Below are positions 3,637-58,083 of a stretch of DNA of 64,000 nt, one piece after another. Each line of letters starts with the position of its first letter. The stretch's first letter is position 1. This stretch comes from Mytilus californianus (Eukaryota): NCBI RefSeq assembly GCF_021869535.1, contig NW_026262723.1, positions 99,448,001 to 99,512,000 on the forward strand, given 5' to 3'. The translations under genes and the position numbers were made by a program. The notes under the pieces were generated by a model. The model had not been told where the DNA came from and searched no databases. It saw nothing but the letters and a program-made list of their open reading frames with translations.

Positions 3637-3919
3637 CAAAATAAGAAAAGGAGTCCACTCAAAATTTTTACCAAAATGTTTTTATTATATAGGTCATAAT
3701 GCATTTTCAATCTTTCGATTCTTTTTGTGATTGAAAGTACTCATAAGAAAATACAACAAAACGTAAAATTGTAACACATTTTGATAAAACCAATAATGAC
3801 CGTTTAACATGTTTATCTGTCCTAGGTAAATTGAATACAAGTACATACATGGATTGTAATTAATCATAAACATAAATGACATTACAACAAGTCAAAGTGC
3901 GTGTATTATAACAGTTGTG

Positions 3920-5284
3920 ATGCGCACGTCTATTCCTTGTCGCACATTAGATGGAAGAAAAACACCGAGAAAATTTGAAATTATGACTGTAGTTAGTGAA
4001 AATTCTGACGAAAATCAACAACAAATGGAAAATGGGGATCGCAGTCAGCAGGTTCTTCCTACTAAACGTGAGAAGAAAATTTCGACTGTTAGTAGAGTTT
4101 CAAAAAAGAGCATTCAGCAGAAAATTTATAAGAAAGGAAAGGTGAAATTTGACAAATCCACCAAATCTTACACCAAAAGTACACCTAGACTTGTAGAACG
4201 TAGTGGCAGTTGTAACATAGTGTCAAGGACTATCAATGGAAAACAAACATCCATCTTCACGGATTTTTTCACAACTCTGATTGAAACTAAATGGAGACTT
4301 GTTCTTCCTGTTTTTGGTATGAGTGTTATTATTTCTTGGATTGCTTATGCTGGAATATTTTACGGGATATCATCAGCTCATGGTGATTTTAGAGAAGACT
4401 TAGTTGCTGGTCATAAAAACTGTATTGCTAATGCCCAAGACTTTTTCGCTATCTTATTGTTTTCTATGGAAACCCAAACCACGATTGGATACGGTTCAAG
4501 GTATGTAACTGATGATTGTCCGGGGACTATATTTTTTATTATGCTACAGTCAATATGGGGTGCATTATTACAGGCACTTTTAACAGGATTAGTAATCGCA
4601 AAAATTCAGAAACCATCAAAACGAGGAAATACTATTTTATTTAGTAAATATATTTGTATTTCTCAGGAACACGATGGAAAATACCTGTCTATTCGAATAG
4701 CCGACCTTCAAAAGTCTAATATGATTGAAACAAGCACCCGTGCTGTTTGTGTAGTGAGTACTCTGACGACGGATGGCGATTTTATATCACACTTCCGACA
4801 TGATATGGAGTTTAAACTGGACAAAAAGTACAGTAGGATACAGCTACAGTGGCCAGTAGTGCTTACACACCGCCTACAACCACATAGTCCATTATACAAT
4901 ATGGATGAAGACGATTTGAGAAATTCTGACCTTGAACTCATTATTTTAATGGATGGTATAATAGAATCAACTGGAATGACCGTTCAGACAAGGACCTCTT
5001 ATATACCAAGCGAATTTCAATGGCAGCATAAATTTAAGCCAATGATTGCAAATATAAATTCATCGGGAGTTTGTGAATTTACTTTGAAACTTTTTCATGA
5101 AACAGAAGAAATTGTGGAAGAAATTAGCTATGAGCCATATCATAAACTAAGAAGAATAAATAAAAGTCAGTCTTCGAAATGTTCCGATTATGGAAGGACC
5201 GAGTCTGGGTTTAGTGAAGGTATAGATACTGATGTATCTTCATGTTGTAGTGATTTTTCAGTATTTGATGCAAAATATATTTGA
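3920..5284 (+). CDS. Inward-rectifier potassium channel (KirA), intronless coding region
   Basis: Slide helix DFFTTLIETKWR, M1, turret Cys, pore FSMETQTTIGYGSR..C, M2 ending AKIQKPSKRGNTILFS, and cytoplasmic domain WP..H..SPL and G-loop DGIIESTGMTVQTRTSY. The first ATG is at 3920 (the ORF track starts at GTG 3917). A candidate splice acceptor ends at 3914. Confidence 0.95.
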   Translation: MRTSIPCRTLDGRKTPRKFEIMTVVSENSDENQQQMENGDRSQQVLPTKREKKISTVSRVSKKSIQQKIYKKGKVKFDKSTKSYTKSTPRLVERSGSCNIVSRTINGKQTSIFTDFFTTLIETKWRLVLPVFGMSVIISWIAYAGIFYGISSAHGDFREDLVAGHKNCIANAQDFFAILLFSMETQTTIGYGSRYVTDDCPGTIFFIMLQSIWGALLQALLTGLVIAKIQKPSKRGNTILFSKYICISQEHDGKYLSIRIADLQKSNMIETSTRAVCVVSTLTTDGDFISHFRHDMEFKLDKKYSRIQLQWPVVLTHRLQPHSPLYNMDEDDLRNSDLELIILMDGIIESTGMTVQTRTSYIPSEFQWQHKFKPMIANINSSGVCEFTLKLFHETEEIVEEISYEPYHKLRRINKSQSSKCSDYGRTESGFSEGIDTDVSSCCSDFSVFDAKYI

Positions 5285-11361: not shown

Positions 11362-12387
11362 ATGTCAAAAAAGGACGAAAACATTATATTTTCTAATAGT
11401 CACAATAGAATTGTTAGCAAACAGGGAAGTTATAGGGTGAAACTAGAAACTCCGAGGAAAACAATATTAAAACATTACTTGAGAGATACATTTACTACTC
11501 TCGTGGACGCTAAATGGCGATGGTCAATATTATTATTTGTTAGTGGATTTTTATTGACATGGATCACTTTTGCCGTAATTTATCTCGCATTTGCTCGTAG
11601 TCATGGTGACTTAGAAAATGAAGATGCAGAAGTCTGTGTGGAAAATGTTTATGATTTTACTACTGCACTATTATTTTCAGTTGAAACACAGCATACAATT
11701 GGATATGGTTTTAGACATGTGACCACAGACTGTCCCCATGCTGTATTGGTAGTATTTATTCAATTCATTCTTGGCATAGGAGTGCAATGTCTCACTGCAG
11801 CGATTGTCTTTTCAAAGTTAATCCGCTCAAAGAGGCGAGGAGACTCTGTTGTATTTAGCCAAAAAGCTTGTTTGGCTGTCGTTGATGGACAATGGCGTCT
11901 TATGGTCAGAGTCGCAGACTTTAGAAAATCAAAGCTCGTCGGTGTAAAAGCCAAGGGAATACTGATAAAGCGTTCTGTAATCAACAATAAACACCATCTT
12001 GAACAAACATTCATTGATTTTGTTTCAGAAGGAGGAAGTGATACTTTGACACTGTTATGGCCTGCTGTCATCTATCATACAATAAACAAAGATAGCCCAT
12101 TGTGGCCACCGATGACATTGCGAAGGTTAGGGGGATATTCTGAAATTGTTGTAAGTCTGGACGGTGTAATTGAGAGTACAAGTCGGGTTGTTCAGACAAG
12201 AACATCATATATCCCCGAAGAGATTCATTATGGTTATAAGTTCCAAAATATATGCCCACAGATAACAGAAGATGGGAAATATCAATGCAGCTACTTTGAA
12301 ATTAACACAGTTTCTCCAGTGGTAACCCCACAATTGAGGAAAAGAATATCTGTTACATCCGTATCTTCAAAGGAATCAATGTATTGA
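11362..12387 (+). CDS. Inward-rectifier potassium channel (KirB), intronless coding region
   Basis: DTFTTLVDAKWRW, pore FSVETQHTIGYGFR..DCP, M2 ending SKLIRSKRRGDSVVFS, RVADFRKS, WP..YHTINKDSPL, G-loop DGVIESTSRVVQTRTSY. An in-frame TAA at 11341-11343 precedes the ATG. Confidence 0.95.
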   Translation: MSKKDENIIFSNSHNRIVSKQGSYRVKLETPRKTILKHYLRDTFTTLVDAKWRWSILLFVSGFLLTWITFAVIYLAFARSHGDLENEDAEVCVENVYDFTTALLFSVETQHTIGYGFRHVTTDCPHAVLVVFIQFILGIGVQCLTAAIVFSKLIRSKRRGDSVVFSQKACLAVVDGQWRLMVRVADFRKSKLVGVKAKGILIKRSVINNKHHLEQTFIDFVSEGGSDTLTLLWPAVIYHTINKDSPLWPPMTLRRLGGYSEIVVSLDGVIESTSRVVQTRTSYIPEEIHYGYKFQNICPQITEDGKYQCSYFEINTVSPVVTPQLRKRISVTSVSSKESMY

Positions 12388-18300: not shown

Positions 18301-19168
18301 TGCAAATTCACACGAGGAAACAAGACCAACAGCAATGACAAGAGACGAAGAACATTGTATTGTCATTGTAAACCATCTGGATCAAATCATGACTGATCCC
18401 TTTGGTGTCGAATGCCATCCTCCATGTCTTATCAATATCTCATCTGGAATGCATACAGTCGAGGAAAACGTGAACATTTCTAAACATTTAATAACTAGTG
18501 ATCTTTATTAAGGTCTACCAAGGGGTTTATAGTCCAATATCAAAGTTAAAATTAAAAACGTTTGAAAATATGACCTCAAAAACAAACCTTAAATATAAAT
18601 CGGGGGAAATAATCTTAGTTACATAAATCCAGAACTTGTATTCAGACGTGCATTGATTTTGGCAAACTGCATATATGATGTTACAATAGAATATGTGCTG
18701 TCTCGACCTGTCGGTTCCATTCTAGTTACGATGACGGCACCTTGAGGAAATCTCCAAGTCTGATTTGGTGAAGCAATTCGAATCTAAAGTCTCTTCTGCA
18801 CTTTTTATACCTTCCTTTGGTTCAATGTATTGATGCTAAAATAAATAAAACATTATGTGACCTTGCAGCGGACTATTTGAACAATGCTTTACTCTGTCGC
18901 AGCTCACAGCTGCAGACGTTTTTGACCGCTACGACACAAAAAACTCTTTGAAGTCTGCTGAACGGGAACGCCGCACAAAGATAGGTTATAAAAGGCAGAA
19001 GTATTCTTAACGGGAAGAAATTCCTGTCTGATAAACAAAACAAACAGGCTCTCCTTAATTTCTTTGGTTGTTTTTTTTCCTCCAAATTTTGGTGGCCTTA
19101 AGCCTTTGTATGTGTAAAAAAGTTAGTTGCAAAGCTTTATGATCAGAAAAAATAAATTATTTCACCAT

Positions 19169-20017
19169 AATGGGACTGCCCCTGATTATCTCTGCGATTT
19201 AATGCCCCCACTTGTTGGTCAAATATCTAATTACGATTTGCGAAACAGTAATAATTATGTAGTACCAAGTTTTAGACTAGATATAACCAGAAAATCCTTT
19301 TTTCCATCTACTACTATTGAATGGAATAGCCTAAACCCCGACATACGTACGTCCAAAAATATAAATATGTTTAAACGAAAGATGAAGTCTAAATTGATAC
19401 AGCCACCTACCTATTTCAGTTGTGGTGATAGAAATCTTAATATCATTCATACACGTTTGAGAAATATGTGCAGTTCTTTAAATTCAGATTTACATCGTGT
19501 TAATATTAAACCCAGTCCCGCATGCAGCTGTGGCCACCCTGTTGAGGATAGTATTCACTATTTTTTGAGTGCCCTTTTTACAACGAAGCAAGAGGAATAT
19601 TGTTTTCAAAATTAGAAAGGTATGCTATATCCATTGATCTTCTATTGGCTGGTGACGGTGACCTTTCTTTTCAGCAAAACAAAGAAATTTTTGAGTCTGT
19701 ACAAGCATATATCAGAATAACACAAAGATTTAAAACAATCAATTAACATTCCGAATTCCAACTTTCCAACTCTTCACTCCAGTCCAGTTTTATATATTAT
19801 ATTCCATATTACATTGTATTTTTTGTATTTTTTTGTTTTTTGTTTTTTTGTTTTTGTTTGCAGTTTGTATTTATACATGCATTCCTACTATGTTTTTCGT
19901 CATTATCTAATGTACTTTGTGTTTATATTTAAATAGGGAGAGGACGTCACTAATGTTGGTATAACTTGTGTCCAATCCCTTTTGCTAATTTTGCAAATAA
20001 AATATGTTTAAACTAAA
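19169..20017 (+). mobile_element. 5'-truncated LINE (CR1/L2-like) inserted into the CXC ORF
   Basis: Open ORF2 tail NGTAPDYLCDLMPP..Y.LRN..SFFPST..EWNSL..HTRLR..CSSLN.DL..CSCG..ED..HYF, ending aataaaatatgtttaaactaaa. Flanked by CACCAT at 19163-19168 and 20018-20023. Confidence 0.85.
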
Positions 20018-31255: not shown

Positions 31256-33815
31256 TGAAACAATAGTGTAACTACATGTTAACGCTATGTGCTTCAACAT
31301 TGCATCATGTACGATATGTTTGCCGTTTCTGTAGTTGTTTTGTCCGCGTACTAGTAATTGTTTTGTCAGCTTCAAGGCATTAGGCAAGATCAACATGACA
31401 ACACTTTTTTATTTCAAGGGCAGTTAAAAGAAAGTCTCCTTCTCACAAAAAAAAGCAAAATTTTAGCGGGAACATTTGTTTTAAATCTTTCAAATGTGAG
31501 AAATTTGAAAAGAACGGTAATATTCTTTTCATTAAATATAATAAATTCATAATCAAATATGCGTTATCCGTAAAATATTGTATTCTAGGAAATCCAAAAA
31601 GTATAGTAAAATAAGAGTTAAATTAAACCGTTTTTTTTTTAAATTGTCCACGTAATTTACAGGTTTTAAACCTTTGAAATATACAAACTAGAAGCCTAAA
31701 GGTGCATGTATTACTCACTTAGCCTCTATGCATGTATATATTATATTGTCTTTATATATGAGTACATGTAATTTGTTATTGTACAGTTAAAGGTCAGTCT
31801 GCATCATCCGGTTGTTACAAATTAACATGCTTGGAATGTGAAATGCCCATTTATTTTCTAAAAAAAATATTTTAGCGTACCATAATAAGCCGAGTTTGGT
31901 TCATGTGAAGTTCATGGAAATTTTAATAAGAGGTGAAGCAACGCGGTGATATATAGTGTGCCGTGCAATGCCTTGAACAGTTTATCAAATAAATATAAAT
32001 ATAAAGGTAGTTTTTATGACATTTCGACAAAATCTGACCACTGAATAAGACATGTAGCTAATCTTTAGAATGTTTGCAAGTGTAACTATTATAAATAAAC
32101 AATCTCGTTTAATATGATACCAGCACAACTTTCAAACCATTCTACATTTTTGCTTCGCATTATTACTCTTATAAAACTGGGAACGCGTCAGGGAGGGGAG
32201 AAGAAATAAGATACGGATGGTTTGACAGTATAAGTATTCGAGACCAGGTCAATGAATATGTTATATATATGATCACATATTGTTGGATAAGCGCTGATAG
32301 TCAAAATTGATACATTTATTATTGCGCGTTTCCTAAGCTTTAATCTATATAACACGATTAGTTTTATTCACATTATTTCGTATGTACGATGTATATGGTG
32401 TTAACATCATATTACAGTCATTACGTCTAATATACGAAAAGTATAGTATATTCCCTAGTGCGTTTTACTCAATGCTGGCCGATTTTTAATTATTAGAGTT
32501 AACCATACTTTGTTAAACTATCACATTATACAATTTAGAAAGCATATTGGTCTAAAAAGTCTTGACTTTGAAAAACAGTACTACCAAACAAACCAACACT
32601 CAGGTATTATATACATGTAATCCTCGAAACGTTCTCTCACAGTGTACTTTATGTGATGATGATGTTGAGAGTATCAATTTTCTTGTACCTAACAGAAGTA
32701 ATTTTGTTCATTTGAGAGAGTAAAAGTAACGATATCGTGTGTCTCTTTTCAAGGAGATCCGAATATAACGGCCTCCTTCGTCTAATGAATACTTTTTTAG
32801 TTTAAATATTTCATGTCGGAGTCTTTTCCCTGATCGCATTTTGCTTCATATTACAAATAAAACTCAAACACTCAAACTCAAATAAAATTATCCAAAAATA
32901 GAAATAATAAAAAAAATAAAAAATACACCCGAAAGAACCCCTAAAACTATCGTTTTCTCTATAAATCACAAAATAAACACAAAAACAAAGGCTGTCATTA
33001 ATTTGTCATACCACGAAGCACCCCATACCTCTTTGGGAAGGATATAGCTAAACATTTAAGTTTCAGGCTAATTAATTTCTGAAATACGTATCGTGTGTGT
33101 TGATATTGGTATTATATATTACACTGAATATATCTTATTACTTCTGAGACTGCTTTTGATATGGATAAAATTTATATTTACCTAAAATATGAATTTGAAT
33201 TATGAAAATAGTTTTTTTTAATAAATATAGATCACAAAAAGTAACCGGAGAAAATAGCCGACCAGTACAGTTCACCATATAATAATGTTATTAGTTTCAA
33301 TTTTTTTCTGTTCATGTACTATTTGTTATAGCTCACTGTCGGTCACACATTCGAACCAACCAATAAACCAGGATCTGAGTCATATCAAAAAAGAAAAAAA
33401 AATCGTAAAACCTTCTTTGGAATTCGTGCTATATCTTGAATGTGTTGTCATACTTATCATTTAATGGTTATTCAATACCACTCACATATCCAGCTGTTCA
33501 ATAACAAAAATGACAAAACGAGCATTTCTCTAATTCAAAGCTTCCACAAAGTATCACTATATTCTACACGTATTGTGTCTTCGCTTAAACCCAGACGCAG
33601 GAGTATCTTCACATCAAAACAAATTATAGACTTTTAAAGGGTTTTGAAATAGATGAATCTTAAATTGAATGTAAAACTTCAAAAGAACATTGTATTGGCA
33701 AAAAAAAAAAAAAAAAATCCTAGAAAATTGGAGTTATACCAAGTTCTTATCAAATAACTGTTACATTTTTTTTGGGAAAGATAAAGACTTGAAAAAAAGA
33801 ATTACTTATATATAT

Positions 33816-34062
33816 GAGCTGCGTCGGATAGAAATCGACCTTTTGCAATAGCACGTATACAAGTACATGTATAAAACTTTGATTGATTTTGAAACATTCA
33901 AATACGAAATAAAAGATGAATTAGGTCTGTTTTGTAGGTTTCTAAAATCAACTCAATTTTCAAGCAGTTACAGAATTTGCATAGAGATTGTTCAACCCGA
34001 AAAAGGTTAACAAACGTATTGATATTCATTTGCATAAGGTCGATTTCTATCCGACACAGCTC
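33816..34062. mobile_element. About 250-bp MITE with TIR GAGCTGCGTCGGATAGAAATCGACC
   Basis: The TIRs are visible at both ends. The interior is the reverse complement of the 57151-57398 copy. Confidence 0.9.
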
Positions 34063-34433
34063 AATTATTTGAGTGAAGTGTAAATCAAAGTATAACAATT
34101 AATGATTCATTTGCTTTATAGATGTAAAATCTAAGAATGAACATGCACCGTTTAATATATAAGAAAAGCAAATTAGCAAATTAGAGCTTGGGAAGATTCC
34201 TGCTGAAAATTGTAAATAGTCCTCCAGATTACAAGTTTGGTTATTTTTTGTCGTTTCGGGTTGCTCCTTTATTCATTTTCATTTCAAATGATAAATAATT
34301 AATAACTGATAACAAAAATCCCTGACAAAAATCATCTACAAAGAAAAAAAATATAAAAGCAGTGTCAATAAATCTGATTTGGATTTTTGTTTCAGTTTAT
34401 ACCTTGCACTGGAAATAGGTATTACACCTAAAG

Positions 34434-35624
34434 ATGATGAGCAGAATGCATCTACGAGATAGAGGGAAATTACAAAGGAAGCCGTCAGAAAGACTTGTGG
34501 ACAAAAATTCCCGCACACATATTTCCGCTAAAGGCATTCGAGGTTGGCGAAAACAATATATGTTTGACTTTTTCACCACAATGGTAGATATAAGATGGCG
34601 TTGGAACATACTAATATTCGTTGGCGGATTTGTAGTCACATGGTTGATATTTGCCATTTTTTATTGGATAATAGGATTTTTCAATGGAGATTACGAAGAC
34701 GACAACAGTGATCTTCACAAACCCTGCATTAAGAATTTACGTTCATTTTTATCAGCATATTTATTTTCAATAGAAACACAAAGTACTATTGGATATGGGT
34801 TTTATTATGTTACAGAGGAATGTTTGATGGCCTATACATGTGTTCTTCTGCAATCTATTCTTGGGGCAGCGCTACAAGCTGCATTGGCGGGACTGGTAGT
34901 TGCCAAAGTAAGGCGAGGAAGGAAAGATAATAACACAATTATTTTCAGTAGTAATGCATGCATTTTAGCTGATGGTGCACAATTAAAATTAGTGTTTAGA
35001 GTAGCAGATACTAGAAAAATTCATGCAATTAATGTCAATGTTAAAGGATATTTGTTTCGTAAAATAGTATCAGAAGAAGGAAAAAATATTCCTATCAAAC
35101 AAGAAATTGTGAATTTTAATGTGGAAGGAGGTTGTAATGGTTTATACTTAGCGTGGCCCCAGCAAATTGTTCACATCATAGATGAAAAATCGCCATTTTG
35201 GAATCTTTCTAAAGAAGACTTACAACAAGAAAATTTTGAACTTATTATTGTATTTTTTGGTGAAGTAGCAACTGTTGGGAGACCTTTTGAAACAGATGTA
35301 TCCTTTTTACCATGGGATATAAAATGGGGGTACAAATTTCAGGCTATGGAACATAAAATTGACAACGAAATCGACAGATTTTATGTAGACATTGGAAATT
35401 TTAATAAAGTTTTCCCAGTGCCTACCCCAACATGCAATGCAAAAGAGCTCAAACTTGCAATGTCGAGGAATAGTTTGAACTTGCCAGATTATATACGAGA
35501 AAATATGAAACAACCAAAATCTAGCCCTCTATTTAGTCGACAAAACAGTGTTGCTGATAAATATTTAGACGCCCCCATTTCAGGCTTCAATGAAACTGAT
35601 CAGTTTTCTGCTCTACCACAATAA
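34434..35624 (+). CDS. Divergent inward-rectifier potassium channel (KirC), intronless coding region
   Basis: DFFTTMVDIRWRW, pore FSIETQSTIGYGFYYVTEEC, M2 QSILGAALQAALAGLVVAK, RVADTRK, WP..IVHIIDEKSPFW, FELII, WGYKF. An acceptor (tttttgtttcag) ends at 34395 and an in-frame TAG at 34416-34418 supports this ATG. Confidence 0.95.
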   Translation: MMSRMHLRDRGKLQRKPSERLVDKNSRTHISAKGIRGWRKQYMFDFFTTMVDIRWRWNILIFVGGFVVTWLIFAIFYWIIGFFNGDYEDDNSDLHKPCIKNLRSFLSAYLFSIETQSTIGYGFYYVTEECLMAYTCVLLQSILGAALQAALAGLVVAKVRRGRKDNNTIIFSSNACILADGAQLKLVFRVADTRKIHAINVNVKGYLFRKIVSEEGKNIPIKQEIVNFNVEGGCNGLYLAWPQQIVHIIDEKSPFWNLSKEDLQQENFELIIVFFGEVATVGRPFETDVSFLPWDIKWGYKFQAMEHKIDNEIDRFYVDIGNFNKVFPVPTPTCNAKELKLAMSRNSLNLPDYIRENMKQPKSSPLFSRQNSVADKYLDAPISGFNETDQFSALPQ

Positions 35625-36187
35625 GTTTCAGTAGATAAACTTACAAACTGACATAATCTTTACACTTCGATATTTATAAATGTAAATACATTTTTCATTC
35701 TTTCATTCAGTCTTATGTTTTATATTCGTTTTAGGCATATCTTTCTCTCCTTGACATGAATTTATTACGTTTTTGAATTTTTATATGCATAACATACATA
35801 TATGAAAATAAAGTTGAGAAAAGGTATTTCTTGTTTTTTCATTACATAAAAAATTAAGTTCTAACAGGTTTTATTGGGTTCTTTGTTTGTCAATATCTTA
35901 TATAAGTCAATTGACAGTTTCTTTTTAATCTTGTTCATTCCCAGGGAAGAGTGTTTTCCTGTAACTGGCTCTTTATAGTTAGAGTGTGGTTTGTACCTGT
36001 GTTTCGTATGGCCGAGTAACGTTCATGAAACAAAACGAATTCAAAAAGAAATTTACGGTAATGAAAAATTGTTTCGATAAAGTTGTTTTAAAGGCATTCG
36101 GCAAGTCACAAAGACTCCATGGATTGATTGATTGTTGTTTGCTTAACGCCCAATGGCTACTATGATTATTTCATGGATATTCGGGAC

Positions 36188-36892
36188 GGCGGAGGATATA
36201 TTTTAGCGAAAACAATCTAGCGCCAAAGTATAGCCCATTTTAGCCCCAGATTTTTTATCCATTCAGTGATAAATTAAATTGTCAATGCCTGTTTTTTTGC
36301 GACACAAATTCATTCATAGCAGAATAATAAATTTTAATAGTATCAAGACAGCACAACATACAAGATGTCATGTCCATAAATATATAATTCTAAACTCAAA
36401 TGTTTAATTTTAAATTTTTGTCCAAGTGAATGTACGAAATGGTCTCTTGATATACTCCCTGTACAGTACTGTCCATAAAATTGTGATAGGACTGTTCCTT
36501 CTCTTTAACATGTCTATATTAGATTGCAGATTCATCGATACTTCATAATTTAATGTATGTTGTTGTTTGTAATTTGATGATAGTGTTCACAAAACGTAAA
36601 TCGCCAGGTGACGTTAGCCACATTTTGCATTTTTTATTTCCTCTGCTTGTTTCAACAACATTTATTTCCATGATTTACTAAATTGTAAATGCAAACAACT
36701 TAAATTTAATGCCACCATAAATTACTGTTCACGGTTTTAGTATGGTGAGTTCTATTCAACCGGGTAAGTTTTCGCAAAAATGGGCTTTCGAAAAAAAGTG
36801 AACGGATTAGTCTTGCTCTAAAATGGGCTATACTGCCTGCGCTAAAATATCCCCTAATTGCTTTAAAATTTTCGCTAAAATGTCCTGCGCCC
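36188..36892. mobile_element. About 700-bp TIR element with an imperfect 9-bp TSD
   Basis: The ends share ggcg(g/c)agga..ttttagcgaaaa and agtatagcccattttag in inverted orientation. Flanks are attcgggac (36179-36187) and attcaagac (36893-36901). Confidence 0.6.
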
Positions 36893-44749: not shown

Positions 44750-44961
44750 GTCGGATAGAAATCGAATACCAATACATCGGGTTGAAAAATCTCTATGCAA
44801 AGTCTGAAACTGTTTGAAAATTGAGTTGATATAAGAATATACAAAGCAGACCAAAATTCATCTTTTATTTCGTATTTGAACGTTCCAAAAGCAATAAAAG
44901 TCTGATACATGTACATGTTTACGTGCATTTGCATTAGGTCGATTTCTATCCGACGCAGCTC
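44750..44961. mobile_element. Decayed copy of the GAGCTGCGTCGG MITE
   Basis: The right TIR ggtcgatttctatccgacgcagctc|AT is intact. The left TIR is eroded (gtcggatagaaatcga) and there is an internal deletion. Confidence 0.8.
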
Positions 44962-45985
44962 ATGTTTAATAATGATGATAATGGTGATAACGAGATTGAT
45001 ATGCAAAGTAGTATTGAACTGTTATTAAAGGTCATAATTTCTTGAAAGAAAACGAACAGCTTGAAACTATAAAACAGTTTGTTTTTAAATGATCCAAGAT
45101 AAATTGTTTTTAAATAATCCAAGATAAAACTTTGCCACCAAATCAATGTTCGTATCTTTTGTTTTAGATGCAGTTAAACTACCAAGTTCATATAATGTAA
45201 GGCAAATGCGATATTTGGATAAAATTAGACAATTATGGCAAATTGGGGGTAAATTGTTCCATGGAAGATTCCTTCGGCATTTGTCTGGAGAAAAATCCAC
45301 TTATTTTTTTTTAAATGAATGTTCAACATAGTTCAACTTTGAATGTCAAAGTTATAAGCCGACCAGTTGTTACGTATAAAAGTAATAAAATGAAACTTCC
45401 GTACATGCTTGAAATTTTTTTGTGAATGGTAGACTGAACAGTTACAAGTGTAGACGGCAAAGAAACTGAATATGTCTTCTAGATCGATGTGCGACGGTGC
45501 AGGTATCAATAAATCCCATCGAAAAACTTGTTTTATTACATAAACAAAAATCTAGAATTAAATGTTAGAATGTGTATATTTTATAGATACAGAAATACAC
45601 TGCAAAAGAAAAATAGAATAATAAAATATGAATTTTAATACTTTATTTTTGAAATTTATATGACTCAATCGGACTATAATCTTTGACATTTTATCTCCAT
45701 CATCGCGGACGTAAAGCAAACAATAATGCATCTAGTATCATCGCAAACATGACATTGTCACAAATTACAACGCCATTTTGTGTTTGGTTATATATTTTTC
45801 AACAATGGACATTATTTTTGTCAATTTTTTTCCTACTCGCATCGATTTTAGACCCATCTTCATGTAACTATACTTCTTGCTAAACAAATTCCTGGTATGA
45901 TATACATTCACAATGGAGAGCACTGCTTTATGAACTGAGAATTATGAATAGAAGAAAAAAGTGGATAACAAGGAAAAACACAGCA

Positions 45986-55506: not shown

Positions 55507-56400
55507 TTACCTCTGTTTTTCTGTTTCCACTGGGTTGCTGGTCTCAGTTACTCTATTTTCACTTTCTTTATTTTTTTTCTTTTTCTTGTCACTTTCGCAT
55601 TCCGAATTATGGGTGGATTTAGTGTTTTGATCCTTATTTTGATTAATCTCGTAAAGGGATTCCGAAACCAATGTCTTACTAATCACTGTTTCGTTATCAG
55701 ATAGTTTTTCTTTCTGATTTCTTTTCTTGCCTCTTTTTTTCTTCCTCCTAAACTCCTGAAGAGCTTCATATGACTTCACAACTTCAAAGTGGTTTGTACC
55801 TGCATCGTTCGAATCTTCATCGAATGAGTCAGTGTTAACTGGTCTGAGGTTACGACTCCTAGGGGACGAAATTATATCAAACTTTCGCTCAATACTACCT
55901 GTCAACGATTTTCTCAGTTCAGATTCGCTAGCTGTACCATCCGTCTCTGATTCGGGTTTAACTTCTGTTTTTGGTGGAATATTGTCCATCCTATCTCGCT
56001 CTGTGGCTAAACCGTTTTGCCTGGATTTTGAATTATTTTCACTTTGAGGATCTTTCACCTTTTCACCTTTTAAACTCCCAGACCTACTTCTGTCAGACCG
56101 CAAGTGGCGAGCAGAACCCATCGGTGATAAATGCATTTCTAAATCTGGAGAAATAAACGGTTTCCAATGAAACCTTAGTAAACAACCAAGTAAAAGCAAA
56201 ATAAATGCTATTCCCAAGATTATAATTCCAACAACATGTAGAGCACCGTATTTCGGGAAGGCATTTTTTTCTGCGAAAGCTACAAACGTAATCGTAAAGC
56301 CCGGTATCATCATTGGAATTGCAATTGTTATCATACAGGGTCCAATCATAGATTTGATTTGATCACACCAATATTTCTTTTTTTCATCTTCTGTTGACAT
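55507..56400 (-). CDS. Two-transmembrane protein with a long charged cytosolic tail (PIRT/TMEM100-like hairpin); probably first coding exon
   Basis: 297-codon open frame from ATG 56400. TM1 MIGPCMITIAIPMMIPGFTITFVAFA, a 10-aa loop, and TM2 LHVVGIIILGIAFILLLLGCLL. An acceptor at 56442-56441 and an in-frame TAA at 56439-56437 lie upstream. The stop overlaps a splice donor. Confidence 0.8.
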   Translation of the reverse strand: MSTEDEKKKYWCDQIKSMIGPCMITIAIPMMIPGFTITFVAFAEKNAFPKYGALHVVGIIILGIAFILLLLGCLLRFHWKPFISPDLEMHLSPMGSARHLRSDRSRSGSLKGEKVKDPQSENNSKSRQNGLATERDRMDNIPPKTEVKPESETDGTASESELRKSLTGSIERKFDIISSPRSRNLRPVNTDSFDEDSNDAGTNHFEVVKSYEALQEFRRKKKRGKKRNQKEKLSDNETVISKTLVSESLYEINQNKDQNTKSTHNSECESDKKKKKNKESENRVTETSNPVETEKQR

Positions 56401-57150
56401 TGTTCTCAAATTTGTAATTATGTCTGATGTTACTGGTTACCTGTTTAGAAATCAAATATTTACTAGATCAATAGGGAGAAAAATGACTTCAAGTAAGTAT
56501 ATAGTAAAGTTCTTAGAAATCATTGGTAATCAATGCTGGCTGGTATAGCGAAGATAATTAATTTATATTGTTTCTCTCATTTCTACAAGAATTATTGATA
56601 ATCAATTACGTATTCATCTTTTACCCTGATAAGTCTTTGACTCATTGTCCAAAGGGGCCAGATATTTGCCTTTGATCACCAAATAAATCACGGTACTAAT
56701 CTACAAGGCTAAATAAACAAGTCATTAAGGGAATGACTTTTGGCCAAAATTTTGACTTCCAAAAGTATATAGGCTCTTAAGAGCCAATGATTAATAAGCT
56801 GGATAATGTAAACTGCTAACGTTTATTTCCATTGAAGGAACTGATGTACATATATCTTTGATTAAAAATATCCAACAAAGAGACCATTTTGGATTTTAAA
56901 TCGTCACCAAAATCATATAGTTGAGGAATAGAGTTTTTATCGTTATCAAATACGAAAATTTTTCAGGAAAATTAAAGTTGTGTGCGAGTATTTCCGGGTA
57001 CGAATATGAAACTTTTATTTCGATTCGGTTCACACATAATTGATTACAGTTCAAACATAAGCTCTTGGGAGCTTTTTACCGAATAAAGATAACATATACA
57101 TAACATAAAGAGCATGCAGATAAAATATTTATCATGTGTAGGTAGCATAT

Positions 57151-57398
57151 GAGCTGCGTCGGATAGAAATCGACCTTATGCAAATGAATATCAATACATT
57201 TGTTAACCTTTTTCGGGTTGAAAAAGCTCTATGCAAATTCTGTAACTGCTTGAAAATTGAGTTGATTTTAGAAACCTACAAAACAGACCCAATTCATCTT
57301 TTATTTCGTATTTGAATGTTTCAAAAATCAATCAAAGTTTTATACATGTACATGTATACGTGCTCTTGCAAAAGATCGATTTCTATCCGACGCAGCTC
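57151..57398. mobile_element. Intact GAGCTGCGTCGG MITE with AT flanks
   Basis: AT|gagctgcgtcggatagaaatcgacctt ... aagatcgatttctatccgacgcagctc|AT. Confidence 0.9.
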
Positions 57399-58083
57399 AT
57401 ATATTAAAATGCATAGATACAGCACAGGCATATTGAATTACATGCAAAGCACTTCTTAAAATTTTTAACCACATTTAAAAATGCTAAAACTGAAGCATAT
57501 TTAAAATTTATCTATTATTATTGCTAATGAAACTTTTTATTTAAGATGGTTAACAAAGTTGCAAACTTTAAAGTCTATCACATCACCATTAACACATTAT
57601 CATAATGCTCAAGTCATATATAAGAATCAGCTTTTTTCTCTATGAATTTTTTTTTTTACCCGATTTGTGATAATCAATCAGAAGCAATAAGTTGGCCATA
57701 AGAATGTCTTGAATTTCGACAACATCACAAAATCTGATGAGGTCCATCTAAGCAACATTTCAACTTAGTTTGGTTACAATAGCTGATGGATTCTTATGAC
57801 CAGGTGAGCTAAGAACGTCAGTGTGGTCCACAAAATATTGTTCACGTATACAGAGGGTTTTTGAGAATTTAACCTACATTGATGGATTCAATGATAGTGT
57901 CAATACTGTATGTGTGTGGTCTTAAGCTTGTTGTAACATGACAACTGTACAAATACTGAGTGATAATAGAAACGCAACACCTACTTAAATTTTCCATTTA
58001 ATAAATATTCATACATACACTACAGATCTTCCATGGAAGTTGACCAATCTTTGTAAGGTTTTATAGATTTCTTCAATCTGATT

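What the first reader, a model, noticed from the sequence alone, without database searches (positions are those of the whole stretch)
34434..35624. KirC: an intact Kir ORF that has lost the filter salt bridge and charge-reversed two PIP2/gating arginines
Seen in sequence: the pore reads ETQSTIGYGF-Y, with TAT at 34803-34805 where Kir channels almost invariably have Arg (Kir2.1 R148, salt-bridged to E138). The post-M2 tether reads KVRRGRK-D (GAT 34926-34928, R189 position; P186 is Gly). The G-loop reads FFGEVATVGRPFET-D-VSF (E299F at 35256-35258, E303A, R312D at 35295-35297), and E224 is Asn. Established: these residues support selectivity, PIP2 activation and rectification in Kir1/2/3. The 396-codon frame is still open, with TIGYG, both turret cysteines and DIRWRW preserved. 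Inference: a maintained atypical subunit, either silent/modulatory in heteromers with KirA/KirB (a Kir5.1-like role), PIP2-independent, or with altered ion selectivity.
Basis: partly seen in the sequence, partly recalled or inferred. Interest (0 to 1): 0.72.

Follow-up and report, generated by a model that had tools for sequence, protein, structure and literature searches.

The report
Mussel potassium channel with rewired gating residues
This is a real, expressed and strongly conserved mussel-family inward-rectifier potassium channel gene that has naturally replaced several arginines whose single mutation has been reported to disable or destabilise mammalian Kir2.1, so it is a ready-made natural experiment on how these channels open.

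Summary
Window 34434-35624 (+) is an intact 396-codon Kir gene with IRK and IRK_C domains. Its best solved relative is Kir2.2.

It is not decaying. The same protein is annotated in four other Mytilus species. More distant orthologues (71-75% identity) come from two vent metagenomes and one other run. All lack a basic residue at R148 (Y/L/F) and R189 (D/Q), and all keep Phe275, Glu277 and Asp288. dN/dS is 0.06-0.08. Strand-consistent RNA reads cover the ORF at low depth.

Context changes the reading:
- KirC is the mussel-family member of a molluscan Kir orthogroup, not an odd extra copy. KirA and KirB are the long-branch paralogues.
- P186G and E303A are ordinary for this orthogroup, and it already varies at E224 and R312.
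- Loss of the pore Arg is recurrent (Kir7.1, KirBac1.1, a second molluscan clade).
- An acidic or amide residue at R189, Asp at R312 and Phe at E299 were seen in none of 264 other Kirs.
- The basic residues of the PIP2 pocket are retained.

Best reading: a weakly rectifying, probably low-conductance K+ channel whose PIP2-to-G-loop coupling has been rewired. This is a new variant of a known kind and has not been tested functionally.

The parts
34434..35624 (+). KirC coding sequence, one exon, 396 codons plus TAA
   Evidence: identical to protein P0277 of the NCBI-derived cluster
34387..34395 (+). Putative 3' splice acceptor (pyrimidine run plus CAG) of a 5'UTR intron
   Evidence: A contig of run X1 matches 34393-35731 with no mismatch, but its first 42 letters do not lie here; sequence. 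This is an inference from one contig. Contigs of related species are collinear with the genome.
34593..34601 (+). R54-W55-R56, the RWR motif at the start of M1 (PIP2 pocket), retained
   Evidence: role from PMC3884141
34773..34775 (+). E114 (Kir2.1 E138), the acidic partner of the lost filter salt bridge, retained
   Evidence: E in 123/123 and 143/146
34785..34799 (+). TIGYG selectivity filter
34803..34805 (+). Y124 (TAT) at the Kir2.1 R148 position; L or F in distant orthologues
34875..34877 (+). Q148 at the Kir2.1 D172 rectification site (Gln throughout the molluscan orthogroup)
34905..34925 (+). K158-V-R-R161-G162-R163-K164, the basic C-linker residues of the PIP2 pocket, retained
34926..34928 (+). 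D165 (GAT) at the Kir2.1 R189 position; Gln in the vent-metagenome orthologues
   Evidence: Arg in 146/146 diverse representatives
35013..35024 (+). R194-K195-I196-H197 (Kir2.1 R218, K219, S220, H221), CD loop; His retained, Ser replaced by Ile
35031..35033 (+). N200 (AAT) at Kir2.1 E224
35253..35297 (+). Remodelled G-loop and beta-I strand, F274 to D288: E299F, M301E, E303A, T305V, Q310E, R312D

Best explanation
KirC is the mussel-family (Mytilidae) orthologue of a conserved molluscan Kir gene. It encodes a working channel subunit that evolved a new solution at three sites. (1) Pore: the Arg that pairs with the pore-helix Glu behind the filter is replaced by a hydrophobic or aromatic residue, as in Kir7.1 (Met). 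TIGYG and the Glu are kept. The predicted result is a K+-selective pore with low unitary conductance and altered block. (2) Rectification: the three classical acidic sites are neutral (Q148, N200, F275), so rectification should be weak. A new Glu two residues on (E277, the M301 position) is predicted to put a ring of charge at the G-loop. (3) Gating: the PIP2 pocket's basic residues are kept, so the lipid probably still binds. The relay from that pocket to the G-loop is inverted in charge. That relay comprises the C-linker R189 and the H221-E303-R312 inter-subunit network. The conserved His197 would now face Asp165 and Asp288 instead of two arginines. Shown here: gene integrity, conservation, purifying selection, transcription, residue mapping, and rarity of the states. 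Inferred: conductance, rectification, PIP2 binding and the His-Asp rewiring.
For: Orthologues with the same states: Mytilus galloprovincialis, edulis, trossulus and coruscus, two vent-metagenome contigs at 75% identity and one Logan contig at 71%. Selection: NG86 omega is 0.077 against the 95%-identical orthologue (bootstrap 0.034-0.129) and about 0.08 against the 75% one. ML codon omega is 0.062 overall, 0.036 in the TM part and 0.054 in the cytoplasmic domain. Expression: in stranded RNA run X21, reads cover 34322-35679 only in the orientation expected for a + strand RNA, and there are none in the adjacent bins. Two oligo-dT runs of a close relative also cover it, rising towards the 3' end. 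Phylogeny: the KirC clade has 100/100 support and sits inside a 99%-supported molluscan orthogroup whose other members carry Arg at both the R148 and R189 positions, or Ser at R189 in three of them. Rarity among 264 other Kirs: R189 is Arg in 261 and Ser in 3; R312 is never acidic; E299 is never Phe; M301 is never Glu. Literature: Kir7.1 has Met at this pore site, and M125R raises conductance about 20-fold (PMC3254186). R189Q abolishes the activity of purified Kir2.1 with little loss of PIP2 binding (PMC3884141). R312H binds PIP2 but has Po below 1%, and R312, H221 and E303 form an inter-subunit network (PMC9506730). Other clade members have also lost R218 (Met in P0004) or K219 (Thr in P0002/P0003), which fits a relaxed need for the canonical PIP2-sensitivity residues.
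Against: There is no functional data. Each of the three Arg changes has been reported to disable or destabilise Kir2.1 when made singly, so a homomeric current is not guaranteed. RNA depth is low (0.5-3x with about 6% of each run read) and the tissue is unknown. The His-Asp rewiring rests on literature contacts, one of which (H221-R189) was seen in a simulation but not in the cryo-EM structure. No tetramer model or coordinates were available to measure distances. The claim that KirC is the only Mytilus member of its orthogroup rests on absence from the top 120 hits of one word-seeded search.
Confidence: 0.55

Rival explanations
1. KirC is an obligate heteromeric, silent or modulatory subunit (Kir5.1-like) that only works with KirA, KirB or another Kir.
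For: Three Kir genes lie on the same strand within 32 kb. Single mutations at R189 and R312 silence Kir2.1. Purifying selection is equally expected for a modulatory subunit.
Against: KirC is only 29-34% identical to KirA and KirB, which fall in other clades on long branches. KirC looks like the only mussel representative of its orthogroup. Co-expression could not be tested.
Confidence: 0.15
2. It is a channel gated independently of PIP2, or by another signal such as pH through His197, because the transduction arginines are inverted.
For: Acidic or amide residues at R189 are unique, and so is Asp at R312. Further in-clade losses of R218 or K219 occur. R189 is described as the coupling lynch-pin.
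Against: K158, R161, R163, K164, R54/R56, R194 and K195 are all retained in Mytilus, which argues that a lipid site is still under selection.
Confidence: 0.17
3. It is a pore with altered ion selectivity (Na+ or other cation leak) after loss of the Glu-Arg pair.
For: The pair is held to stabilise the pore loop (PMC6920955; PMC2585864).
Against: TIGYG and E114 are intact. The TM part is the most constrained region (omega 0.036). Kir7.1 and KirBac1.1 have Met at this site.
Confidence: 0.08
4. It is a decaying gene or a pseudogene in waiting.
For: Several residues regarded as essential are gone.
Against: Intact ORFs are found in every source examined, omega is 0.06, the derived states are themselves conserved, and RNA reads are present.
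Confidence: 0.01

Closest known systems
Vertebrate Kir2.x (Kir2.2 / Kir2.1), Pfam IRK + IRK_C
   Same: Best solved-structure match (E 3.4e-76, residues 14-340). It shares the two-TM pore architecture, TIGYG, the pore-helix Glu, the turret disulfide cysteines, the RWR motif and the basic C-linker residues of the PIP2 pocket.
   Different: It lacks R148, D172, R189, E224, E299, E303 and R312, the residues behind the filter salt bridge, strong rectification and PIP2-to-G-loop coupling in Kir2.1.
Kir7.1 (KCNJ13)
   Same: Kir7.1 is the mammalian Kir without Arg at the R148 position (Met125). That residue explains its very small conductance, and M125R raises it about 20-fold (PMC3254186). KirC-type channels carry Y/L/F there, so a similar pore phenotype is the most economical prediction.
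   Different: The loss is independent: KirC nests among Arg-bearing molluscan genes. Kir7.1 keeps a G-loop Glu (E276) and a PIP2-site Arg (R162) according to its structure paper. KirC has Phe at E299. Its Asp at the R189 position was seen in no other Kir examined here, but Kir7.1 itself was not aligned at that site.
Second molluscan Kir clade without the pore Arg (Patella/Lottia, Solemya, Sinanodonta, Octopus 'channel 10-like')
   Same: Hydrophobic or small residue at R148 (A, F, I, V). Patella and Lottia also share the HGD to NGD change.
   Different: It is a separate clade (100% support). It keeps R189 and E303, keeps R312 (Lys in Octopus), mostly keeps E299, and carries Glu at the D172 site. 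All its members are uncharacterised predicted proteins.
Kir5.1 (KCNJ16), the classical silent or modulatory subunit
   Different: There is no sequence-level link beyond family membership. Its match ranks below Kir2, Kir3 and Kir6 (E 4e-55). The analogy was not testable here.

Membership tests
Inward-rectifier K+ channel (Kir; Pfam PF01007 IRK + PF17655 IRK_C) | Both family domains above the curated thresholds, in order | tested here: met
   IRK 156.2 bits (cut-off 22.7) and IRK_C 140.8 bits (cut-off 22.5)
Inward-rectifier K+ channel (Kir; Pfam PF01007 IRK + PF17655 IRK_C) | K+ selectivity filter T-I-G-Y-G preceded by the pore-helix Glu | tested here: met
   E114 and T118-G122
Inward-rectifier K+ channel (Kir; Pfam PF01007 IRK + PF17655 IRK_C) | Pair of extracellular cysteines (Kir2.1 C122/C154) | tested here: met
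   C98 and C130 are invariant columns
Inward-rectifier K+ channel (Kir; Pfam PF01007 IRK + PF17655 IRK_C) | Glu-Arg pair behind the filter (E138/R148) | tested here: not met
   Y124; Arg or Lys in 258 of 264 other Kirs. Also not met by Kir7.1 and KirBac1.1, which are accepted members, so this feature does not define the family.
Inward-rectifier K+ channel (Kir; Pfam PF01007 IRK + PF17655 IRK_C) | Basic residues of the PIP2 pocket (RWR, K182, K185, K187, K188, R218, K219) | tested here: met
   R54/W55/R56, K158, R161, R163, K164, R194, K195
Inward-rectifier K+ channel (Kir; Pfam PF01007 IRK + PF17655 IRK_C) | C-linker Arg (R189), conserved from KirBac to mammals | tested here: not met
   D165; Arg in 261 of 264 others and Ser in 3; table in PMC2585864
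Inward-rectifier K+ channel (Kir; Pfam PF01007 IRK + PF17655 IRK_C) | Inwardly rectifying, PIP2-dependent K+ current | not testable with these tools
   Needs electrophysiology
Strong rectifiers (Kir2/Kir3 type) | Acidic residues at D172, E224 and E299 | tested here: not met
   Q148, N200, F275
Kir7.1-like pore (works-like comparison, not orthology) | Non-basic residue at the R148 position with an otherwise canonical filter | tested here: met
   Y124, with L or F in orthologues. Orthology to Kir7.1 is not supported: the PDB match to Kir7.1 (E 1.7e-40) ranks far below Kir2.2 (E 3.4e-76), and KirC nests inside a molluscan orthogroup. No Kir7.1 sequence was in that tree.

The most novel reading that the evidence does not exclude
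Mussel-family Kir channels have inverted the charge of the relay that couples PIP2 binding to the G-loop gate (R189D and R312D around a retained His). They therefore either open without the canonical PIP2 coupling or respond to a different signal such as pH. If so, they are the first natural Kir to show that the 'lynch-pin' arginine is dispensable, and they offer a template for dissecting binding from transduction.
Probability: 0.2. Interest if true: 0.75.

Novelty: new variant of a known kind. Interest (0 to 1): 0.6.

Why it matters
R189 and R312 are central in current models of how PIP2 opens Kir channels. R312 is also a human disease site (Andersen-Tawil syndrome). A natural channel kept under strong selection with Asp at both sites, and with no Arg behind the filter, gives a set of co-evolved substitutions. 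These can be moved stepwise into and out of Kir2.1 to test which contacts carry the gating signal. It also shows that the pore Arg has been lost at least three to four times in animal Kirs. For mussel biology, Kir transcripts were reported to change during larval shell formation and shell repair. Which Kir gene that was is not known.

Tried and rejected
- Pseudogene reading: rejected on omega and orthologue integrity.
- My own first mapping of E224 (to the SEGEY stretch, and then one residue off) was wrong.
- Finding a 5'UTR exon from Logan contigs of related species (L001, L005, L006) failed. They are collinear with the genome, so they say nothing about splicing.
- Searches for R148Y/R128Y and for deep-mutational-scan values at R148/R189 found nothing usable in the held library.
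- Searches for a described molluscan or bivalve Kir family found only two Mytilus expression papers that do not identify the gene.
- The insect Kir3 comparison was left open. One thrips 'Kir3-like' protein has Ser at R148. The paper read says only that AeKir3 has not been expressed functionally.
- Structure prediction was not run. The tool returns no coordinates, so it could not test the proposed His-Asp contacts, and membership was already clear from sequence.
- Scan notes near this place: none.

Full report
**1. What is there.** Window 34434-35624 (+) is an uninterrupted 396-codon ORF. An in-frame TAG lies 18 nt upstream of the ATG. It carries both Kir family domains far above threshold: IRK 5.9e-46 and IRK_C 4.6e-41. 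Its best solved relative is chicken Kir2.2 (E 3.4e-76 over residues 14-340), followed by Kir2.1, Kir3.2, Kir6.x, Kir5.1/4.1 and Kir7.1. Two further Kir ORFs lie upstream on the same strand: KirA at 3917-5284 and KirB at 11362-12387. They are only 29-34% identical to KirC. No other Kir fragments occur in the window.

**2. Residue mapping.** The mapping rests on the HMMER alignment to Kir2.2, a 123-sequence MAFFT alignment and an HMM-anchored alignment of 296 domain rows.

| Kir2.1 | KirC | Kir2.1 | KirC |
|---|---|---|---|
| E138 | E114 | R218 | R194 |
| R148 | Y124 | K219 | K195 |
| D172 | Q148 | H221 | H197 |
| K182 | K158 | E224 | N200 |
| K185 | R161 | R228 | K204 |
| P186 | G162 | E299 | F275 |
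| K187 | R163 | M301 | E277 |
| K188 | K164 | E303 | A279 |
| R189 | D165 | R312 | D288 |

**3. Organism and orthologues.**
- The 90% cluster around the best hit (P0001, 95% identity) holds annotated proteins of Mytilus galloprovincialis, M. edulis, M. trossulus and M. coruscus. They are named only 'ATP-sensitive inward rectifier potassium channel 12-like' or 'inward rectifier potassium channel 2-like'.
- The same cluster holds one NCBI entry with a masked name that is identical to KirC (P0277). That is the window's own annotated protein.
- Earlier notes of this scan call the genome a California mussel. I confirmed only that it is a Mytilus closest to M. coruscus (99% over the domain).
- More distant orthologues are P0002 and P0003 (75%; a JGI 'Abe' contig and an ENA metagenome contig, possibly deep-sea mussels, which is my inference) and P0004 (71%; a Logan contig).
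- After these, identity drops to 52% or less: oysters, scallops, ark shells, unionids, cephalopods and gastropods.

**4. The derived states are conserved.**
- All Mytilus sequences keep Y124, D165, F275, E277, A279 and D288.
- The distant orthologues have L or F at 124 and Q or D at 165. F275, E277, A279 and D288 are invariant.
- An unbiased screen looked for positions where the clade differs from a residue at least 90% conserved elsewhere. It adds HGD to NGD (N84), T141S (S117), K187R, S220I/V, L298F, T305V, Q310E, R325K/N and one Thr to Val/Ile.
- These changes cluster in the pore loop and in the C-linker, CD-loop and G-loop triad.

**5. Selection and expression.**
- Pairwise NG86 gives dN 0.020 and dS 0.266, so omega is 0.077 (bootstrap 0.034-0.129) against the 95% orthologue. 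It is about 0.08 against the 75% orthologue, where dS is near saturation.
- A codon ML model on seven coding sequences gives omega 0.062. By region it is 0.036 in the TM/pore part, 0.054 in the cytoplasmic domain, and 0.08-0.12 in the tails.
- In a stranded RNA-seq run of the same species label (X21, about 6% of the run read), reads cover 34322-35679 at 0.5-2.9x. They lie only in the orientation expected for a + strand transcript, with zero depth in the bins on either side.
- Two oligo-dT runs of a close relative also cover the ORF, rising to 6x near the 3' end.
- No listed read difference falls on the key codons, but depth is too low to exclude editing.
- One contig of run X1 matches 34393-35731 perfectly. 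Its first 42 letters lie elsewhere, and the break is at a pyrimidine-rich CAG (34387-34395). That suggests a spliced 5'UTR. This is a single-contig inference.

**6. Phylogenetic place.**
- In a 39-row tree (IQ-TREE, PMSF) the KirC clade has 100/100 support and a stem of 0.91. It sits in a molluscan group together with unionid, cephalopod, gastropod and pteriomorph genes. KirA and KirB have end branches of 2.9 and 2.7.
- In a 79-row domain tree the clade (100%) nests in a 19-row molluscan orthogroup (99%), next to ark, oyster, pearl-oyster and scallop genes (89%).
- Those neighbours carry Arg at R148 (Lys in one). At R189 they carry Arg, or Ser in three of them.
- No second Mytilus protein appears among the top hits, although five Mytilus proteomes are in the database.
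- KirC therefore looks like the mussel family's version of a conserved gene, not an extra atypical copy. KirA and KirB have their own distant relatives.

**7. How unusual each change is.** The comparison covers 118 close and 146 diverse (50%-cluster) Kirs outside the clade.

| Site (Kir2.1) | State in other Kirs | State in KirC clade |
|---|---|---|
| R148 | R or K in 258 of 264; non-basic in six representatives | Y, L or F |
| R189 | R in 261, S in 3 bivalve genes; never acidic or amide | D or Q |
| R312 | R, K, Q, S or H; never acidic | D |
| E299 | never Phe | F |
| M301 | never Glu | E |

- The six non-basic R148 representatives comprise a 100%-supported molluscan clade (Patella/Lottia A, Solemya F, Sinanodonta I, Octopus V), a thrips protein (S) and one unnamed protein (S).
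- The tree needs at least three to four independent changes at R148.
- From the literature, Kir7.1 has Met at that site and KirBac1.1 has Met116.
- The R189 equivalent is Arg even in KirBac1.1 (R153).
- P186G and E303A are ordinary in the sister molluscan genes, and E224 and R312 already vary there.
- The truly exceptional features are therefore R189D/Q, R312D and the E299F/M301E pair, not the filter salt bridge.

**8. What the literature says these residues do.**
- E138 and R148 stabilise the pore loop (PMC6920955; PMC2585864 citing Yang 1997).
- Kir7.1's Met125 explains its tiny conductance, and M125R raises it about 20-fold (PMC3254186).
- R189Q abolishes the activity of purified Kir2.1 but barely lowers PIP2 binding. 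It is described as a 'lynch-pin' that couples binding to gating (PMC3884141).
- R312 forms an inter-subunit network with H221 and E303 that links the R218/K219 site to the G-loop. R312H still binds PIP2, but its open probability falls from 70% to below 1% (PMC9506730).
- A targeted MD study adds H221-R189 and P186-E303 contacts in the open state (PMC4462750). The cryo-EM paper did not see H221-R189.

**9. Most likely mechanism (inference).**
- The PIP2 pocket residues are all retained in Mytilus: RWR, K158, R161, R163, K164, R194 and K195. A lipid site is probably still used.
- The relay residues are replaced as a set, with charge inversion around a retained His197. His-Asp contacts could substitute for the Arg-His and Arg-Glu contacts of Kir2.1, and they might add pH sensitivity.
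- The distant orthologues have additionally lost R218 (Met, P0004) or K219 (Thr, P0002/P0003). This fits a relaxed need for the classical sensitivity residues.
- With Q148, N200 and F275, rectification should be weak. E277 may supply a new ring of negative charge at the G-loop.
- With a hydrophobic residue at 124, a Kir7.1-like low conductance and altered block are the economical prediction.
- I put 0.55 on this package. The remainder is 0.17 on PIP2-independent or differently gated, 0.15 on an obligate heteromeric role, 0.08 on altered selectivity and about 0.01 on decay.

**10. Comparison and novelty.**
- Membership of the Kir family is secure. Membership of the strong-rectifier type is not met.
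- The resemblance to Kir7.1 is functional and convergent, not orthology.
- The gene is already in public annotations under generic names. I found no paper that describes this clade or its residue pattern.
- Two Mytilus papers report unnamed Kir transcripts changing in larval development and shell repair.
- I rate it a new variant of a known kind. It is of solid interest to channel biophysicists because nature has supplied a co-evolved solution at sites that are individually loss-of-function in Kir2.1.

**11. Limits.**
- There is no electrophysiology, no coordinates and no tissue resolution.
- dS to the distant orthologues is saturated.
- The species assignments of the metagenome and Logan contigs are inferred.
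- The 'sole orthologue' statement rests on absence from one search.

Noticed in passing
window 33810-34063; copies at 57150-57404 (-) and 44777-44963 (-): An element of about 255 bp with inverted ends of about 40 bp (MITE-like) lies 370 bp upstream of the KirC start. RNA and contig depth over it is very high, at 90-95% identity with many loose ends, so it belongs to a dispersed, transcribed repeat family. A second high-depth repeat patch is at 36068-36261.
   Followed up: partly
window 3917-5284 (+) and 11362-12387 (+): KirA and KirB are intact Kir ORFs with canonical R148, R189 and R312, but they sit on very long branches (2.9 and 2.7 substitutions per site). Each has its own distant relatives (P0142/P0202 for KirA; P0193, 47% identity, for KirB). 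KirA has Gln at R218 and Ser at K187.
   Followed up: partly
proteins P0183, P0269, P0212, P0223, P0249 (not in the window): A separate, well-supported molluscan Kir clade (limpets, Solemya, Sinanodonta, Octopus) also lacks the pore Arg (A/F/I/V). It keeps R189 and E303, keeps R312 (Lys in Octopus), and has Glu at the D172 site. It appears uncharacterised.
   Followed up: partly
window 34683-34691 (N84-G85-D86): The His of the near-invariant HGD motif at the outer end of M1 is Asn in the KirC clade, and also in Patella and Lottia, another lineage without the pore Arg. It is His in 97% of Arg-bearing Kirs. This may be a coupled change.
   Followed up: no
window 35538-35621 (C-terminal tail): The tail keeps a conserved SR(Q/R)NSVAD(K/E)(Y/F) stretch and the terminal FSALPQ in all orthologues down to 71% identity. 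It may be a phosphorylation or trafficking signal.
   Followed up: no
window 19127-19615 (+) and 55507-56409 (-): Two other long ORFs have no Pfam match at E 0.01. I did not test that.
   Followed up: no
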